From positions 281,155 through 345,154 of IMG/VR virus record IMGVR_UViG_3300023184_000025: 64,000 nucleotides of DNA, one strand, 5' to 3'. The notes under the pieces are model-generated. The model was not told the DNA's origin. It saw only the letters and a program-made list of their open reading frames with translations, and did not search any database. Both the position numbers and the translations under genes were made by a program. How positions within the stretch are numbered: position 1 is the stretch's first letter; the number at the start of each line of letters is the position of its first letter. Shown piece by piece: positions 6,672 through 20,434 of this stretch.

Positions 6672-6768
6672 TTTTATTTTCCTTAAAAAAAGAATGAGTT
6701 TTAAATCATTCACTATTATGTATCAGTGTTTGCAACAATGTTAATTAAAATTGGGGGTATTTTGGTCC

Positions 6769-6792
6769 AAAAAAAACCCGCCGAAGCGGGTT
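6769..6792 (-). terminator. intrinsic terminator ending the tmRNA transcript
   Basis: AACCCGC-TTCG-GCGGGTT followed by a T run. Confidence 0.85.
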
Positions 6793-7064
6793 CTGAGTTT
6801 CTGTTACGAGGTATGTCTTACCCTAGACGGCTTTTATCAAGCTGCCAATGCGAACTGTTCGTCGTTTGCGTTTACGTTTTTTGCTTGATTTACGGTCATC
6901 GCCTACCGTGCTGTCCACTCTGTTACTCTTTGCCCTGTCAAAACCATGCTCACCCCCGACAAGAATATACTAACCTAGTATACTCTTGGTGGAAGTGCCG
7001 GGGCTCGAACCCGGGTCCAAGACAACTTTCTCTTCGCCTCTTCCCTTTCGGGGTTTACAGCAAT
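6793..7064 (-). ncRNA. ssrA: circularly permuted (two-piece) tmRNA; tag ANDEQFALAA
   Basis: T-arm and CACTTCCACCA (3' end 6987) come first, then a 29-nt hairpin spacer, then 5' GGGGGTG (6957) with G3:U70, then tag GCA AAC GAC GAA CAG TTC GCA TTG GCA GCT TGA TAA (6869-6837). Confidence 0.9.
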
Positions 7065-7068
7065 ATTC

Positions 7069-7701
7069 TTATTTAATCAATCTACGCTTTTGTAAATTCA
7101 ATTCTGCTATTTTAGCATCGTCTGGCTTTAGATAGTAATTCTTCTCACCATCGTTATACCAGTGTCTACCAAACGCATTGTTGTTTTTATTCTTGCGTAG
7201 TTGAGTCCATTCAATTGTTGTTATCCAACCTTCTGGAATTTGTTCTTTATTATACTTTTTGCGTGATGACAAGTCAACCGCATCTTTACCCACACACCAA
7301 ACTTTTCCAAACTGCGAATTGTTTTCTTTCTGTTGGTGTTGCTTTTCAGCAAAGGTCTTCTTACGCTTTTCCATTGCTGAGTCAGTGTTTGCCAAATCAC
7401 ACACCTTCTTTTGATGTTCTTTGTTTACAGAAAAATTGTGTTCAGTGCGAATACCTGTAAATGGATTTGGGTGTAGTTGATGACGCAACTTTCCCGCTTC
7501 TCGTTGTCTTATTCTTACTAATTCTTCTTTTGGGCTTAACTTTGCTAAACCCTGCCACGCAACATAATCTTGCCAACGACCATATTCTTCATATAACTTG
7601 CGATGTGCTTCTGCGTGGTCATCAACAGATAATTCTACAAGATTGCTTGGATCGTCTGTTCCGCCTGCGTGTTTAGGAATAATATGATGTTTGTGGCTCA
7701 T
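7069..7701 (-). CDS. free-standing HNH homing endonuclease with NUMOD-like C-terminal repeats
   Basis: HKHHIIPKHAGGTDDPSNLVELSVDDHAEAH HNH core; FGKVWC / IPEGW / FGRHWYNDG repeats; TATAAATA promoter 5 nt before ATG. Confidence 0.8.
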   Translation of the reverse strand: MSHKHHIIPKHAGGTDDPSNLVELSVDDHAEAHRKLYEEYGRWQDYVAWQGLAKLSPKEELVRIRQREAGKLRHQLHPNPFTGIRTEHNFSVNKEHQKKVCDLANTDSAMEKRKKTFAEKQHQQKENNSQFGKVWCVGKDAVDLSSRKKYNKEQIPEGWITTIEWTQLRKNKNNNAFGRHWYNDGEKNYYLKPDDAKIAELNLQKRRLIK

Positions 7702-9655: not shown

Positions 9656-10261
9656 TTAGTCTACACTTGGCCCATTGCCGTTTTTAAAGCCCACCTTTCC
9701 ACCTTCAGATTCAATGCGTTTGATCACATCTTCGAATAAAATGGGTGTGTAATCGGTTTGCTCCACGCACACACAGTGATATCGCGGATCAATGTAGTTG
9801 CTGTAGATAACTTCTCCAGTATCAGCGTGTGCGCCACGAGGCTTCATCACACGGTTAGCGTGAGTGTGTCCGTGAATGTTCACACCAAAGCGACCCAAAC
9901 TTGCTTCATGCACAGGGATGTGGCTCAAGATCATTCCGTTCATCACATGATATGCTCGCAACTCACGAAAGTATTTGCGATATTCCTCATCACGAAAGAT
10001 ATCGTGATTACCACGGATCAGGACCTTGTCACCATTCAAGCGGGCCATTGTTGGTAATGCTTTACGATTGATGACCACATCACCCAAATGATAGACCTTG
10101 TCGTTGGGCCGCACACGGTCATTCCAACGACAAATCATTTCTTCATCCATTTCCTCAGCCGAGTCCCAGGGACGAAGTTTTGTAACACCATCGTTACGTG
10201 TGAAGCGACATACACCAGTATGTCCAAAATGTGTGTCGCTGACTAAAAATACACTAGGCAT
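9656..10261 (-). CDS. calcineurin-like metallophosphoesterase
   Basis: SDTHFGH, HLGD, RGNHD, HGHTH motifs. Confidence 0.85.
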   Translation of the reverse strand: MPSVFLVSDTHFGHTGVCRFTRNDGVTKLRPWDSAEEMDEEMICRWNDRVRPNDKVYHLGDVVINRKALPTMARLNGDKVLIRGNHDIFRDEEYRKYFRELRAYHVMNGMILSHIPVHEASLGRFGVNIHGHTHANRVMKPRGAHADTGEVIYSNYIDPRYHCVCVEQTDYTPILFEDVIKRIESEGGKVGFKNGNGPSVD

Positions 10262-10285
10262 ATATTGCTCCTTTCTTTAACTTAG

Positions 10286-10314
10286 ATTATACAATTGTTT
10301 GAGTTACCAGTCAA
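10286..10314 (-). promoter_or_regulatory. sigma70-type promoter
   Basis: TTGACT-17bp-TATAAT. Confidence 0.8.
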
Positions 10315-10332
10315 CTGTTTTTGTAATAAAAA

Positions 10333-10532
10333 ATAGTTAAAGGCACTACCCTGTGTTTAAAGCATTAGGTTTTATCAACGGTATCAGCGTTGCCGTAACA
10401 CTCCCATCAGCATGTTCAACCAAGTGCCACTTGGCTCGGCCAGTATATCGGCTACAGTAGGCTATGGGTGATCACTTCCCTGGTAGTTAGGATCTGCTGG
10501 CTAAGCTTTCTTTCGCTCACGCCTTTAACTAT
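10333..10532 (-). ncRNA. candidate structured RNA (about 200 nt) downstream of rpoZ
   Basis: Terminal ATAGTTAAAGGC/GCCTTTAACTAT helix, several internal helices, trailing U tract. Confidence 0.5.
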
Positions 10533-10536
10533 TACA

Positions 10537-10785
10537 TTAAAAAACTTTGTCAGAACGTCTAGGTCGACGGTCTGGATTTTTCACTTCTGTAGGTTTTAAC
10601 AAATACTCTCTACCCACATGTCCTGCTTCAATTTCCTTAAGAGCAGTGACTACTGCTCCGTTGGTGGAAGCAATGTGTGAGCGATAACCATTGCGAAGTT
10701 CTCTAACTCTGCGAGTTGCAATTAGCACAAGATCAAATCGGTTACCAACTTGTTCTACTGCGTCTTCTGATGTAATTCTTGCCAT
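10537..10785 (-). CDS. rpoZ: RNA polymerase omega subunit
   Basis: MARITSEDAVEQVGNRFDLVLIATRRVREL...VTALKEIEAG matches the omega consensus. Confidence 0.85.
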   Translation of the reverse strand: MARITSEDAVEQVGNRFDLVLIATRRVRELRNGYRSHIASTNGAVVTALKEIEAGHVGREYLLKPTEVKNPDRRPRRSDKVF

Positions 10786-10793
10786 GTTAATCC

Positions 10794-11969
10794 TTAAAGG
10801 TATTTTTGATGTAGGCGTTGTGAGTCATCGCCTAAGTCTTTTATTAATTTAGCATTGTAATAAAAGTGTTCTGTGTGATTGTTGTAATAGTTTTTTAAAT
10901 CATTAATGCTGTGATCTGCAATTAATTTTTTAATTGATTGTATAGCCATTGATACCCTGTCATGAAAATCACGCACTCCTTGATACCTGTAATCAATTAA
11001 GTCATGCGGAAACCAAAATCCTTGTGCTTCTAAATTGCTTACTGCGTTATAACAAAGAGGTATAGCTACCAAATGATGCCAGAAAGCTCTCATGGTTTTC
11101 TCTGTGAATGCTTGATGTAAATCATTATTTTTTGTTTCTCTAATTACCGAAGCAAAGCAACAGCGGTTGTTATTCCATGTAAAACTATCAACAAAACAAA
11201 ATTGTTGAACTCTTTTTTTAATTGCAGTATTGTTGTTGATATTTTTTATTTTAACCTCACCATCGCTGTTGACTTTTGTGTCATACAATGATGATATCAA
11301 ATCAATAGTGTCCTGACTTTTAAAATAAGTGATCTGTTCTGCATAGTCTAATAACACTTGTTTTGGTGGCAATTTATACAGGCTATCAAATAAACAATGA
11401 TCTAAAAACTCTAATACTCGCATTGCAATATATGATCTATCATTGTAGTGTTTTGTACCACCAGCCCAATAACTAAAATGATATTGCATCATTTTATTTT
11501 TTTCAGTGACTATGTCTGGGTGACTAACAAATTCACCAGGACTAAAACAAGTACGATAAGCACTTTCGCAATAGGCCCAGGACAACTCAACAATTGAAAA
11601 CGATTTTTCGTGATAAATGTTGCACCATTCTTTCCACCAATTTTTCATTCCTAAACTCTGACTTAACACCACAGTGATGTTTTCTATATCAGCACATTTT
11701 GTTCGTAACCACTGATGTAGATAAACCATTAACTCTTCGCTGATGTATTCTTGGTACAATATAGCCACAGGCTGTGCAAAACTTGTACCAAAATCAAAAT
11801 GTTGTGTTAATGCATCAAGTTTAGAAAAAACAAACTGTTTTAATTCAGTAGAATTTAACGTATCAGTGTTGGATATAAGATCGTCGCCAATTCTACAGGC
11901 TATTTTGTAGTTTGCTGGTTGTTGATGTGTTCTGATGTACCTAACAACATCTTCGTTGGCAACGTTCAT
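10794..11969 (-). CDS. hypothetical protein with GT10-like C-terminal region (ET..TEKT family)
   Basis: IRETK..FTEKT..GFWFP..IDYRY..D..DR; paralogous to 21834..22922. Confidence 0.45.
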   Translation of the reverse strand: MNVANEDVVRYIRTHQQPANYKIACRIGDDLISNTDTLNSTELKQFVFSKLDALTQHFDFGTSFAQPVAILYQEYISEELMVYLHQWLRTKCADIENITVVLSQSLGMKNWWKEWCNIYHEKSFSIVELSWAYCESAYRTCFSPGEFVSHPDIVTEKNKMMQYHFSYWAGGTKHYNDRSYIAMRVLEFLDHCLFDSLYKLPPKQVLLDYAEQITYFKSQDTIDLISSLYDTKVNSDGEVKIKNINNNTAIKKRVQQFCFVDSFTWNNNRCCFASVIRETKNNDLHQAFTEKTMRAFWHHLVAIPLCYNAVSNLEAQGFWFPHDLIDYRYQGVRDFHDRVSMAIQSIKKLIADHSINDLKNYYNNHTEHFYYNAKLIKDLGDDSQRLHQKYL

Positions 11970-18018: not shown

Positions 18019-18025
18019 AAATTTT

Positions 18026-18170
18026 TATAGTCAAGCACCGAGTATGCCAATTTAGGAGTCCGGTGCTTCCGTTCCAAAGCCGATGCAGTTATATCAGGAT
18101 CCGCCTCCGGCCGATGGGACCCGAATAGTGTATGCGTCCATACACGATACCTTATCGATGCTTGACTATA
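18026..18170 (-). ncRNA. candidate stem-closed RNA cassette
   Basis: 16-bp closing helix TATAGTCAAGCATCGA/TCGGTGCTTGACTATA; inner GTGTATG-GACG-CATACAC hairpin. Confidence 0.55.
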
Positions 18171-18261
18171 AAAACATATTGAAACACACTAACTACCTTG
18201 GTATGTACTAAAGTTCATAGAACCGCTACGACCCTATCTTTAATGTGCTTCAATATGCTCT

Positions 18262-19034: not shown

Positions 19035-19270
19035 CTATATTAAAATACACTAAAGGAACCATTGTGCATCTATGTCTACACTATACGAACGTCTCGTATA
19101 GGCCTGCACGGTCATTACTGCCTACATACTCCGCCGCTTCTCTGGGATTAGTTCCGTATCATCTAAACGGACCCCGGTTTCATAGACTGTAAGATTGCGT
19201 AGGGCGGCCCCTGTGCTCGCGTCTTACAGTCCCTAACGGTGTAGGTAACCTTTAATACATTTTAATATAG
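19035..19270 (-). ncRNA. candidate 236-nt highly structured RNA heading the tRNA array
   Basis: 22-bp closing helix with 3 G-U pairs; inner GACTGTAAGA/TCTTACAGTC and CTATACGA/TCGTATAG helices; preceded by a GCAA tetraloop hairpin. Confidence 0.65.
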
Positions 19271-19729: not shown

Positions 19730-20434
19730 ATGATCAATACTAATACAGATAAAATAATAATTATATGTTATTCTAGTTTTAGCGGCGGAAAATTTTTAGT
19801 TAACAGTCTAGGGTTAAGCAATAAAATTGTATTACAAGATATCAACTTGGCAACACAGCAAGCAAATGGAAATTTCTCAAAACAGGAAAAGTTTGAATAT
19901 TTTGTTACAAAATTAAACGAAAATGGACCCACTAAAGAATGGAACGATCTTGGACTAGGGTGTTTTCAGTTTTTTGGTGTTCTTGACAAGGAATACTTGC
20001 AAAACAAAGTCACTGTAGAAAGATTTGACAACAAAATTTCAAATATCATTGACAATGATCTAACATTTTTTCTAGTTGCACATAATTACATTTTTTTGCC
20101 AAAATATTTAGAGGTATGGAAGAATGCAAAAATTATAGTGTTTGAAAACTCTGATTTGTTTATTAAATGGAGAACAAACGGAAAACAGACTGACAATGGT
20201 GCGTTTTCAAGAGAGAAATTTTTAGATAAAAATGTAATACACTATTTTGACAATAATAATTATTTTTCAAAAATCAAGACCCTAGACGAGATTGAAAAAA
20301 TGCATCAGGTATTAGACTTACCTGACTTTGATAAAGAGTTAGTATCAAACTACTATGATTTATGGATGAGCAAGTTACTAGAAAATAAAATATACTGGGA
20401 AAAAAGTAATAAATCTGGCAGAATCAATTTTTAA
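19730..20434 (+). CDS. hypothetical protein, possible sulfotransferase-like P-loop fold
   Basis: ICYSSFSGGKFL N-terminal motif, shared with 56857..57432. Confidence 0.4.
   Translation: MINTNTDKIIIICYSSFSGGKFLVNSLGLSNKIVLQDINLATQQANGNFSKQEKFEYFVTKLNENGPTKEWNDLGLGCFQFFGVLDKEYLQNKVTVERFDNKISNIIDNDLTFFLVAHNYIFLPKYLEVWKNAKIIVFENSDLFIKWRTNGKQTDNGAFSREKFLDKNVIHYFDNNNYFSKIKTLDEIEKMHQVLDLPDFDKELVSNYYDLWMSKLLENKIYWEKSNKSGRINF

What the first reader, a model, noticed from the sequence alone, without database searches (positions are those of the whole stretch)
10333..10785. Phage rpoZ followed by a roughly 200-nt structured RNA: possible RNA-polymerase takeover module
Seen: an intact omega subunit gene. 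Immediately downstream lies a 200-nt segment with a 12-bp terminal helix, AAAGCTTAG/CTAATGCTTT, CCCATAGC/GCTGATGGG, a CCAAGT-GGC-ACTTGG hairpin and a U tract. Known: omega aids RNAP assembly and forms part of a ppGpp site, and 6S RNA is a rod of about 190 nt that binds sigma70 holoenzyme. Inference: a 6S-like decoy plus a variant omega could redirect host RNAP. Caveat: two offset frames (MSERKLSQQ... and ...AYCSRYTGRAKWHLVEHADG...) could instead be a frameshifted small gene.
Basis: partly seen in the sequence, partly recalled or inferred. Interest (0 to 1): 0.62.

Follow-up and report, generated by a model that had tools for sequence, protein, structure and literature searches.

The report
Novel structured RNA after phage rpoZ
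A 345-kb freshwater phage carries a normal RNA-polymerase omega gene followed directly by a strongly conserved, about 200-base folded RNA of no known family; it is not a 6S-like polymerase decoy and sits where sister phages carry a tRNA gene.

Summary
rpoZ (minus strand, 10537-10785) is an intact, canonical omega gene under purifying selection. A 201-nt non-coding element (E1, 10333-10533) starts 4 nt after its stop codon.

E1 is real and functional as RNA:
- Between sister phages it changes far less than rpoZ synonymous sites (1/201 against pS 0.20; 16/199 against pS 0.40).
- It has stops in all six frames, and its indels are not multiples of three.
- Eleven natural variants give compensatory and G-U to Watson-Crick changes that support a multi-branched fold on the rpoZ strand.

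The 6S-like decoy idea is not supported. Rfam gives no hit, the fold is not rod-like, and omega is not a variant. The phage shows no sigma (region 2), beta or beta' gene by Pfam, and the neighbouring genes are unrelated to RNA polymerase.

E1 occurs only in one narrow phage clade, as a single copy, always fused to rpoZ. In 32 of 80 other phage rpoZ loci a tRNA starts 3-7 nt after the stop.

Best reading: a new stable structured RNA of a tRNA-operon-like transcript, comparable to T4 rnaC/rnaD. Its function is unknown, and a cis-regulatory role remains possible.

The parts
10537..10785 (-). rpoZ, RNA polymerase omega subunit, 82 aa. Canonical core (residues 1-62) with a basic C-terminal tail.
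   Evidence: ORF. Pfam PF01192 47.2 bits and TIGR00690 45.6 bits. Aligns 1-62 to solved E. coli-type omegas, E about 1e-11. pN/pS 0.016/0.198 and 0.086/0.40 against sister phages.
10333..10533 (-). E1: a 201-nt conserved non-coding structured RNA element of no known family.
   Evidence: Stops in all six frames. No Rfam hit. 1/201 and 16/199 substitutions against sister phages, compared with rpoZ pS 0.20 and 0.40. The covariance model finds it in 16 loci, always directly 3' of rpoZ. Covariation.
10521..10532 (-). P1, 5' arm (AUAGUUAAAGGC). It starts 4 nt after the rpoZ stop codon.
   Evidence: 10 of 12 pairs are invariant, one changes AU to GU, and the outer pair 4-202 is mismatched in 3 variants.
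10333..10344 (-). P1, 3' arm (GCCUUUAACUAU).
10493..10520 (-). J1/2: a 28-nt junction strand drawn unpaired, nearly invariant (changes at 4 positions across 11 variants).
   Evidence: Alignment view. Coordinates.
10477..10492 (-). P2 hairpin (UCCU / GGGA) with an 8-nt loop.
   Evidence: Pair 46-55 changes UG to CG in 3 variants.
10403..10468 (-). P3 domain: the long-range helix CCCAUAGC/GCUGAUGGG encloses hairpins P3a (10437-10454) and P3b (10418-10436; the CCAAGU-GGC-ACUUGG hairpin extended to 8 bp).
   Evidence: Pair 73-127 is AU, changing to CG in L119 and GU in L113. Pair 72-129 changes UA to UG. In P3b, 101-117 changes GU to GC three times and 107-111 changes UA to UG. P3a is weak, with an A-C mismatch in 10 of 11 variants.
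10361..10402 (-). P4 (AGUGUUA-GG / CCUAAUGCU) capped by hairpin P5 (10376-10392; CAACG/CGUUG with a 7-nt loop).
   Evidence: P5: 4 of 5 pairs change on both sides, giving three stem versions. P4: 140-170 changes AU to GC three times, and wobble to Watson-Crick changes occur at 136-174, 137-173 and 142-169.
10345..10360 (-). J4/1: a 16-nt junction strand, invariant apart from one change. Its 3' six bases GGUAGU (10345-10350) are complementary to the P2 loop ACUACC (10482-10487), a candidate pseudoknot stacking on P1.
   Evidence: two one-sided changes keep the pairing (AU to GU twice, CG to UG once) and one variant breaks it. Suggestive only.
10328..10333 (-). U6 tract at and after the P1 3' arm.
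   Evidence: It is not conserved: in type-2 relatives an ORF start codon follows P1 by 1-2 nt. The terminator scan does not flag it.
10286..10314 (-). Sigma-70-type promoter-like site TTGACT-17-TATAAT for the next gene. Not part of E1.
   Evidence: 11 of 12 matches. Also present in the relative that lacks E1 (L084) and after the 372-aa gene in L114.
9656..10261 (-). Downstream gene: metallophosphoesterase (context only).
   Evidence: Pfam Metallophos and PHROG 547.
10794..11969 (-). Upstream gene: 391-aa protein with a GT-B glycosyltransferase-like fold, one of a paralogous family in this phage (context only).
   Evidence: No Pfam or PHROG hit. AF2 model pLDDT 81. The listed top-50 Foldseek PDB matches are almost all GT-B-type glycosyltransferases, with weak E-values of 1e-3 to 4e-2. 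Paralogs.

Best explanation
E1 is a functional, structured non-coding RNA of a new family, made from the same strand and transcript as the phage omega gene.

Shown:
- It is non-coding.
- It is conserved more strongly than the amino-acid-changing sites of rpoZ.
- It folds into a P1-closed multi-branched structure (P1, P2, a P3 three-way domain, a P4-P5 arm and long invariant junction strands), supported by compensatory changes and by G-U to Watson-Crick changes that fit only the minus strand.
- It is a single-copy element that stays fused to the rpoZ stop codon while the gene downstream changes.

Inferred: E1 occupies the slot that a tRNA gene, mostly tRNA-Trp, holds 3-7 nt after rpoZ in many other omega-encoding phages. 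Two further unknown closing-helix RNAs lie inside this phage's tRNA array. On that basis E1 is most likely cut out of a polycistronic tRNA-operon-like transcript by host RNA-processing enzymes, for example RNase P or RNase E acting at the P1 helix. It would then accumulate as a stable small RNA, like T4 rnaC and rnaD.

Its molecular target is unknown. Its invariant junction strands suggest a specific ligand, protein or RNA partner. It is not a 6S-type decoy.
For: - Non-coding: stops in all six frames, and frames are not kept in relatives.
- Conservation against L003: E1 1/201, rpoZ pS 0.198, pN 0.016. Against L082: E1 16/199 plus 4 gap columns, rpoZ pS 0.40, pN 0.086, and the 391-aa and downstream genes align poorly or not at all. 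The two 100-nt bins that hold E1 are 100% identical while the flanks are 75-99%.
- Structure: 97.4% of cells paired and 6 pairs changed on both sides. Covariation score 0.118 against shuffles 0.070 +/- 0.006 (0 of 500), and at most 0.038 for slid controls.
- Strand: G-U pairs become A-U or G-C at 136-174, 137-173, 101-117 and 46-55. All neighbouring genes and tRNAs are on the minus strand.
- Linkage: all 16 covariance-model hits lie 0-4 nt after the rpoZ stop, with two different downstream contexts.
- Single copy.
- tRNA slot: in 32 of 80 IMG/VR rpoZ loci a tRNA starts 3-7 nt after the stop (30 are tRNA-Trp), and 76 of 80 have tRNAs within 3 kb.
- Sibling elements E2 and E3 sit in the tRNA array. 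E3 lies 75 nt downstream of a 12/12 consensus promoter.
- T4 precedent: rnaC and rnaD are annotated at the end of the T4 tRNA cluster, and their function is still unknown (PMC9697503).
Against: - There is no expression or end-mapping data.
- E1 has no tRNA-like T-arm, unlike T4 rnaC. It shows no sequence similarity to the tRNA-Trp of sister phages.
- All 11 variants come from one narrow clade, so several covarying cells may trace to a few events.
- The 5' half can also be drawn in an alternative fold of almost equal energy.
- In type-2 relatives a 372-aa ORF starts 1-2 nt after P1 without a Shine-Dalgarno sequence. That fits a cis-acting role at least as well.
- A relative with the same synteny lacks E1 altogether, so E1 is dispensable for rpoZ as such.
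Confidence: 0.5

Rival explanations
1. E1 acts in cis, as a riboswitch-like or protein-sensing element or as an intercistronic processing and stability element. Formation of P1 would control what happens downstream: read-through at the U tract in type-1 genomes, or access to the start codon that abuts P1 in type-2 genomes. It could also define and protect the 3' end of the rpoZ mRNA.
For: - The architecture resembles large aptamers: a P1-closed multi-way junction with invariant junction strands and variable peripheral stems.
- In 7 of 11 variants a 372-aa ORF starts 1-2 nt after the P1 3' arm with no Shine-Dalgarno sequence. It is truly coding from that ATG, as shown by synonymous third-position changes.
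- In the window a U6 tract follows P1.
- The rpoZ stop codon lies 0-4 nt before P1, so a terminating ribosome would open P1 (inference).
Against: - E1 stays with the upstream gene rpoZ while the downstream gene changes.
- In the window the next gene has its own strong promoter after E1.
- The base of P1 is A-U rich, so it would make a poor intrinsic terminator, and the scan does not flag it.
- No known riboswitch family matches.
- E1 remains under strong constraint in genomes without the abutting ORF.
Confidence: 0.3
2. E1 is a 6S-like RNA that binds host RNA polymerase holoenzyme as a promoter decoy and, together with a variant phage omega, redirects transcription.
For: - E1 is about 200 nt long and tightly linked to rpoZ in all 16 loci.
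- The junction strands next to P1 are large and invariant, and could in principle mimic an open bubble.
- The phage shows no RNA polymerase beta or beta' or sigma-70 region 2 gene by Pfam, so it probably depends on host polymerase.
Against: - RF00013 gives no hit at E<=10 in the element or in the whole phage. The same search over 14 control genomes rang in 7, over the cut-off in 4, including E. coli and B. subtilis.
- The fold is not a rod: 13 of 68 pairs span the midpoint against 53 of 61 in E. coli 6S. The 5'-half to 3'-half duplex is -48.7 kcal/mol (shuffles -38.7 +/- 5.0), against -75.0 (shuffles -44.4 +/- 5.2) for 6S.
- Covariation supports local hairpins and a three-way domain, not a long terminal stem.
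- Omega keeps the N-terminal MAR motif and a canonical core.
- More than 200 other phage contigs carry omega without E1.
Confidence: 0.04
3. E1 is a selfish or DNA-level element: a MITE-like insertion with 13-bp terminal inverted repeats, or a recombination or replication site. Its near-identity between phages would then reflect recent spread rather than selection on an RNA.
For: - It has perfect 13-bp terminal inverted repeats.
- Presence and absence are clean: a relative with 70% identical omega and the same gene order has only 67 nt between rpoZ and the phosphoesterase gene.
- E1 is more similar between genomes than its flanks are.
Against: - There is a single copy per genome and none elsewhere in five complete related phages, IMG/VR, the metagenome collection or 185,579 genomes.
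- It is always at the same site next to rpoZ.
- No target-site duplication is evident.
- Internal helices covary, and the G-U to Watson-Crick changes are strand-specific. That indicates selection on an RNA fold.
- E1 divergence grows with host-genome divergence (1, about 7, then 16-plus changes), as expected for vertical descent.
Confidence: 0.05
4. E1 is a decayed or frameshifted small protein gene.
For: A 22-codon GTG-initiated frame and a second open stretch of about 40 codons exist on the minus strand.
Against: - Relatives carry indels of +1, -2 and +1.
- One relative has a stop inside the second frame, and Leu-to-Pro changes occur in the first.
- Conservation is highest in blocks that ignore codon phase.
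- A pseudogene would not be 40-fold more conserved than synonymous sites.
Confidence: 0.01

Closest known systems
6S RNA (Rfam RF00013)
   Same: Similar length (about 180-200 nt), with the 5' and 3' ends paired in a closing helix. Thematic link to RNA polymerase through the adjacent omega gene.
   Different: No covariance-model match. Multi-branched rather than rod-like. No central bubble flanked by long stems. Binding and pRNA templating are untested.
Phage T4 stable RNAs rnaC (species 1) and rnaD (species 2) at the end of the T4 tRNA cluster
   Same: Phage-encoded, non-tRNA, 120-140-nt structured RNAs in a tRNA-operon context that also holds a protein gene (segB). Their function is still unknown (PMC9697503). 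E1 likewise sits in a tRNA-type slot next to an embedded protein gene.
   Different: T4 rnaC ends in a canonical tRNA-like T-arm; E1 has none. There is no sequence similarity. E1 is larger, and expression of E1 has not been shown.
tRNA genes abutting phage rpoZ (tRNA-Gly - rpoZ - tRNA-Trp arrangement in freshwater huge phages), and the mitochondrial 'tRNA punctuation' idea (from general knowledge)
   Same: A compact structured RNA begins 3-7 nt after the rpoZ stop in 32 of 80 loci; E1 begins 4 nt after it. Excising such an RNA would define the mRNA ends. In type-2 relatives it would leave the next ORF nearly leaderless (inference).
   Different: E1 is not a tRNA by ARAGORN or the Rfam tRNA model. 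It shares no similarity with those tRNA-Trp genes.
Large riboswitch aptamers and other P1-closed multi-junction cis-regulatory RNAs
   Same: A closing P1, a multi-way junction with invariant junction strands, covarying peripheral helices and a candidate loop-junction pseudoknot. The P1 3' arm abuts a start codon or a U tract.
   Different: No Rfam riboswitch family matches. E1 lies downstream of the gene it stays linked to, and no ligand is implied by the context.
Bacterial RpoZ (omega)
   Same: For the protein part: full-length match to Pfam and TIGRFAM omega models and to solved omegas, with the N-terminal MAR motif kept.
   Different: It is phage-borne. Other phage omegas are 60-80% identical to it, while cellular omegas in species-representative genomes reach at most about 56%. 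The C-terminal tail is basic. There is no PHROG family, and the 50,697 GenBank phage records hold no convincing phage homologue: the 9 weak hits include bacterial genome records and short unannotated contigs.

Membership tests
6S RNA (RF00013) | Score at or above the Rfam gathering threshold (46.4 bits) with the 6S covariance model | tested here: not met
   No match at E<=10 in 10200-10850, in 10322-10542, or in the whole 345-kb phage. The control search rang in 7 of 14 genomes, over the cut-off in 4.
6S RNA (RF00013) | Rod-like fold: closing stem, large central bubble, long terminal stem | tested here: not met
   13 of 68 MFE pairs span the midpoint, against 53 of 61 for E. coli ssrS. Half-against-half duplex z is about -2, against about -6. 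Covariation supports local hairpins and a three-way domain.
6S RNA (RF00013) | Binds sigma-70 holoenzyme and templates pRNA | not testable with these tools
   Needs biochemistry.
RpoZ / omega (PF01192, TIGR00690) | Profile match above the curated cut-off over the whole conserved core | tested here: met
   PF01192 47.2 bits (cut-off 26). TIGR00690 45.6 bits (cut-off 23.6), covering residues 1-57 of the 60-position profile.
RpoZ / omega (PF01192, TIGR00690) | N-terminal residues that in E. coli omega lie at ppGpp site 1 (MARVT; the role is from general knowledge) | tested here: met
   MARIT aligns to MARVT of solved E. coli-type omegas. ppGpp binding itself is not tested.
RpoZ / omega (PF01192, TIGR00690) | Evolves as a functional protein (purifying selection) | tested here: met
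   pN/pS 0.016/0.198 and 0.086/0.40.
tRNA / tRNA-like stable RNA (including the T4 rnaC type) | Cloverleaf, or at least a T-arm with the GTTCRANYC loop, detectable by ARAGORN or Rfam tRNA | tested here: not met
   No tRNA or tmRNA call at 10333-10533. T4 rnaC shows the T-arm; E1 does not.
Known riboswitch, ribozyme and intron families (Rfam 15) | Covariance-model match | tested here: not met
   Best scores are 12-14 bits, against unrelated families.
Intrinsic terminator | Short G+C-rich hairpin followed directly by a conserved U tract | tested here: not met
   Not flagged by the scan. The base of P1 is A-U rich and its loop is 176 nt. The U tract is replaced by an ORF start in 7 of 11 variants.
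MITE-like mobile DNA element | Several copies at different sites, with terminal inverted repeats and target-site duplication | tested here: not met
   Inverted repeats are present, but there is one copy per genome, always after rpoZ, and none elsewhere. No duplication is seen.
Small protein-coding gene | An open frame kept in relatives, with change biased to synonymous sites | tested here: not met
   Frames are broken differently in L082. Indels are not multiples of three.

The most novel reading that the evidence does not exclude
E1 is a trans-acting RNA partner of the phage omega subunit or of host RNA polymerase, built on a new, non-6S, multi-junction architecture. It would be made in fixed ratio with omega from one transcript, so the pair together reprograms host transcription. 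The evidence does not exclude this. The only positive hint is the unbroken rpoZ-E1 linkage across changing downstream genes.
Probability: 0.08. Interest if true: 0.85.

Novelty: new variant of a known kind. Interest (0 to 1): 0.55.

Why it matters
- Structured RNAs of about 200 nt with multi-way junctions, invariant junction strands and covarying helices are usually riboswitches, ribozymes or dedicated protein partners. A new one in a huge phage is a concrete target for experiments.
- The context is new. Omega genes form a phage-borne clade in more than 200 IMG/VR contigs and are embedded in tRNA arrays. This points to an undescribed way for large phages to express a polymerase subunit from tRNA-operon transcripts.
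- The same phage holds at least two more unknown closing-helix RNAs in its tRNA array. Large-phage tRNA islands may therefore be a reservoir of unclassified stable RNAs, like the still unexplained T4 rnaC and rnaD.
- The specific '6S-like takeover' idea can be set aside.

Tried and rejected
- Rfam at the gathering threshold on the whole window, and at E<=10 on 651-nt and 221-nt stretches: nothing for E1. RF00013 on the whole phage: nothing.
- BLASTN 'distant' against 50,697 phage records: no match.
- Exact and gapped DNA patterns in IMG/VR, JGI metagenomes and 185,579 genomes found only the same lineage plus chance 19-21-mers. L091 is a chance hit in a high-GC ORF.
- nhmmer --max and two covariance models (R1, R2) were run against all fetched loci, the phage's own genome and related omega-encoding huge phages (R1 on five, R2 on four). 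No paralogue or distant homologue was found; the positive control scored 250 bits.
- The RNAalifold 'fold A' was rejected for the 3' part: helix 121-131/182-192 has 4 pairs broken without compensation.
- E1 as a derived tRNA-Trp: no similarity.
- TnpB-like, IscB-like or reverse-transcriptase partners: the flanking 391-aa and 372-aa proteins have no Pfam hit and model as GT-B-like.
- Retron, CRISPR and intron readings: no RT, repeats or Rfam support.
- A script testing E1-tRNA duplexes timed out and was dropped. One paper search failed.
- Literature searches found no paper describing phage-encoded omega or this RNA. These libraries are incomplete.
- Complex prediction was not used, because no protein-protein binding is claimed.
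Full report
**Where the window lies**

The window is the last 64 kb of a 345,154-bp IMG/VR virus record that CheckV rates 99% complete. It carries 28 tRNA genes and a permuted two-piece tmRNA, all on the minus strand. All genes around the finding are also on the minus strand.

**The omega gene**

The ORF at 10537-10785(-) encodes an 82-aa protein.
- It matches Pfam RNA_pol_Rpb6 (47.2 bits, cut-off 26) and TIGR00690 rpoZ (45.6 bits, cut-off 23.6).
- Residues 1-62 align end to end with solved E. coli-type omegas, including the N-terminal MAR(I)T against MARVT.
- Against two sister phages, pN/pS is 0.016/0.198 and 0.086/0.40.

It is therefore an intact, selected and canonical omega with a divergent basic tail, not an obvious variant. 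By Pfam the phage has no sigma-70 region 2, beta or beta' gene, so it presumably uses host polymerase.

**The element (E1): the observation**

On the minus strand, 4 nt after the rpoZ stop, a 13-bp perfect helix (10521-10533 with 10332-10344) encloses 176 nt. A U6 tract follows. After that comes a TTGACT-17-TATAAT promoter-like site for the next gene, a metallophosphoesterase.

Taken alone the fold is only modestly better than chance: MFE -61.8 kcal/mol, z -1.95. All six frames contain stops.

**Relatives**

Omega turned out to be common in IMG/VR: 218 confirmed contigs, many from phages of 200-525 kb. E1 is rare.
- BLAST, nhmmer, exact and gapped pattern scans of IMG/VR, JGI metagenomes and 185,579 genomes, and two covariance models found it only in one narrow clade whose omega is at least 85% identical.
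- Omega cluster members gave more contigs. These yielded 16 loci and 11 distinct full-length variants.
- In every one E1 starts 0-4 nt after the rpoZ stop.
- A relative with 70% identical omega and the same gene order has only 67 nt between rpoZ and the phosphoesterase gene, so E1 is absent there. Other omega phages also lack it.
- E1 is single-copy in its own genome.

**Selection**

| Comparison | E1 differences | rpoZ pS | rpoZ pN | Flanks |
|---|---|---|---|---|
| Window vs L003-type | 1 of 201 | 0.198 | 0.016 | 75-99% identical per 100-nt bin |
| Window vs L082 | 16 of 199, plus four gap columns | 0.40 | 0.086 | 391-aa gene about 58% identical; downstream gene unalignable |

E1 is thus constrained as strongly as, or more strongly than, amino-acid-changing sites of omega. 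Long blocks, including strands drawn as unpaired, are invariant.

Coding is excluded. Relatives have indels of +1, -2 and +1, a stop inside the second frame, and Leu-to-Pro changes in the first.

**The fold**

The RNAalifold consensus (fold A) and a refined model (fold B) were both counted on the 11 variants.

Fold B consists of:
- P1: 10521-10532 with 10333-10344
- P2 hairpin: 10477-10492
- P3: 10461-10468 with 10403-10411, enclosing P3a (10437-10454) and P3b (10418-10436)
- P4: 10393-10402 with 10361-10369
- P5 hairpin: 10376-10392

Overall counts for fold B:
- 97.4% of cells are paired.
- Six pairs change on both sides.
- The covariation score is 0.118, against 0.070 +/- 0.006 in shuffles (0 of 500) and at most 0.038 when partners are slid.

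Support by helix:

| Helix | Evidence |
|---|---|
| P5 | Exists in three stem versions; 4 of 5 pairs are compensated. |
| P4 | One compensated pair (AU to GC, three times) and three wobble-to-Watson-Crick pairs. |
| P3 | One AU to CG and one AU to GU change. |
| P2, P3b | G-U to G-C changes. |
| P3a | Weak, with an A-C mismatch in 10 of 11 variants. |

The G-U pairs and their conversions fit only the minus strand.

Fold A's helix 121-131/182-192 is broken at four pairs without compensation. The 5' half can still be drawn in two nearly isoenergetic ways.

A six-pair pseudoknot between the P2 loop and the strand next to P1 is possible. Two changes keep the pairing and one breaks it.

Caveat: all variants come from one clade, so several covarying cells may trace to few events.

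**Is it 6S-like?**

No.
- The 6S model gives nothing at E<=10 in the element or anywhere in the phage. The same search over 14 control genomes rang in 7, over the cut-off in 4, including E. coli and B. subtilis.
- In E. coli ssrS (fetched), 53 of 61 MFE pairs span the midpoint, and the two halves form a -75 kcal/mol duplex (shuffles -44 +/- 5).
- In E1 only the 13 P1 pairs span the midpoint, and the duplex is -48.7 kcal/mol (shuffles -38.7 +/- 5).

**Context**

- The 391-aa gene upstream has no Pfam or PHROG hit. It models with pLDDT 81. The listed top-50 PDB matches are almost all GT-B-type glycosyltransferases, though with weak E-values (Atlas lead).
- In 7 of 11 variants a 372-aa distant paralogue of that gene is inserted between E1 and the phosphoesterase promoter. 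Its ATG lies 1-2 nt after P1, it has no Shine-Dalgarno sequence, and it is truly coding from that ATG.
- Nearly identical E1 copies occur with either downstream context (L118 against L115). E1 therefore travels with rpoZ, not with the downstream gene.

**The tRNA slot**

Among 80 IMG/VR rpoZ loci:
- 76 have tRNAs within 3 kb.
- 37 have a tRNA ending within 100 nt upstream, mostly tRNA-Gly(GCC) or tRNA-Val.
- 32 have a tRNA starting 3-7 nt after the stop, of which 30 are tRNA-Trp.

E1 starts 4 nt after the stop, which is the same slot. It is not a tRNA and is unrelated in sequence to those tRNA-Trp genes.

The same window holds two more unannotated elements of the same design, an A-U-rich closing helix of 20-22 bp around a G+C-rich core, inside the tRNA array:
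- E2 (18022-18174, z -5.5) lies 3 nt before tRNA-Asp.
- E3 (19035-19270, z -4.1) lies 10 nt before tRNA-Ser and 75 nt after a 12/12 consensus promoter.
- Neither matches Rfam. Both are kept in the sister genome.

T4 offers the precedent. rnaC and rnaD are stable RNAs at the end of its tRNA cluster, which also embeds a protein gene. They are still of unknown function (PMC9697503).

**Conclusion**

- Shown: E1 is a conserved, structured, non-coding RNA element of a new family, on the rpoZ strand and fused to rpoZ.
- Inferred: it is released from a tRNA-operon-like transcript as a stable RNA (confidence about 0.5). Alternatively it acts in cis on downstream expression or on rpoZ mRNA ends (about 0.3).
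- The remaining rivals are unlikely: the 6S-like decoy (about 0.04), the mobile-DNA reading (about 0.05) and the small-gene reading (about 0.01).

Noticed in passing
window 18022-18174 (-): E2: an unannotated element of about 153 nt with a 20-21-bp A-U-rich closing helix and a G+C-rich core, 3 nt upstream of tRNA-Asp inside the tRNA array. Fold -59.4 kcal/mol, z -5.46. No Rfam hit. 94% identical in the sister phage.
   Followed up: partly
window 19035-19270 (-): E3: an unannotated element of about 236 nt with a 22-bp closing helix, 10 nt upstream of tRNA-Ser(GCU) and about 75 nt downstream of a perfect TTGACA-17-TATAAT site (19373-19345). That site follows a strong terminator-like hairpin (19502-19478). 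z -4.12, no Rfam hit. It is 80% identical in the sister phage, with peripheral hairpins swapped or deleted and core blocks kept.
   Followed up: partly
loci L009-L081 (IMG/VR rpoZ loci): Phage-borne omega genes are widespread (218 confirmed IMG/VR contigs) and sit inside tRNA arrays, typically tRNA-Gly(GCC) - rpoZ - tRNA-Trp(CCA) with the tRNA 3-7 nt after the stop. They are 60-80% identical to the window's omega, while cellular omegas reach at most about 56%. There is no PHROG family, and no convincing phage homologue among 50,697 GenBank phage records. I found no paper describing this.
   Followed up: partly
window 6746-7115 (-): A permuted (two-piece) tmRNA gene of betaproteobacterial type with tag peptide ANDEQFALAA. 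The same tag is encoded by a tmRNA in another omega-encoding 353-kb phage (L008). This hints at a betaproteobacterial host.
   Followed up: no
L114:1956-3074 and relatives (L082, L115, L119, L122-L124): A 372-aa ORF, a distant paralogue of the window's 391-aa GT-B-like gene, is present or absent between E1 and the phosphoesterase promoter in otherwise near-identical phages. Its ATG lies 1-2 nt after the P1 helix and it has no Shine-Dalgarno sequence. If E1 is excised, this would leave a nearly leaderless mRNA.
   Followed up: partly
window 10794-11969 (-); genome paralogues L125-L127: A multi-copy family of 360-460-aa proteins with no Pfam or PHROG hit. The AF2 model resembles GT-B glycosyltransferases, with weak scores. 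At least four paralogues are in this phage.
   Followed up: partly
window 20085-20238: Another long-range inverted repeat (21 nt, 81% complementary, 112 nt apart). It lies inside a plus-strand 234-aa ORF, so it may not be an RNA element.
   Followed up: no
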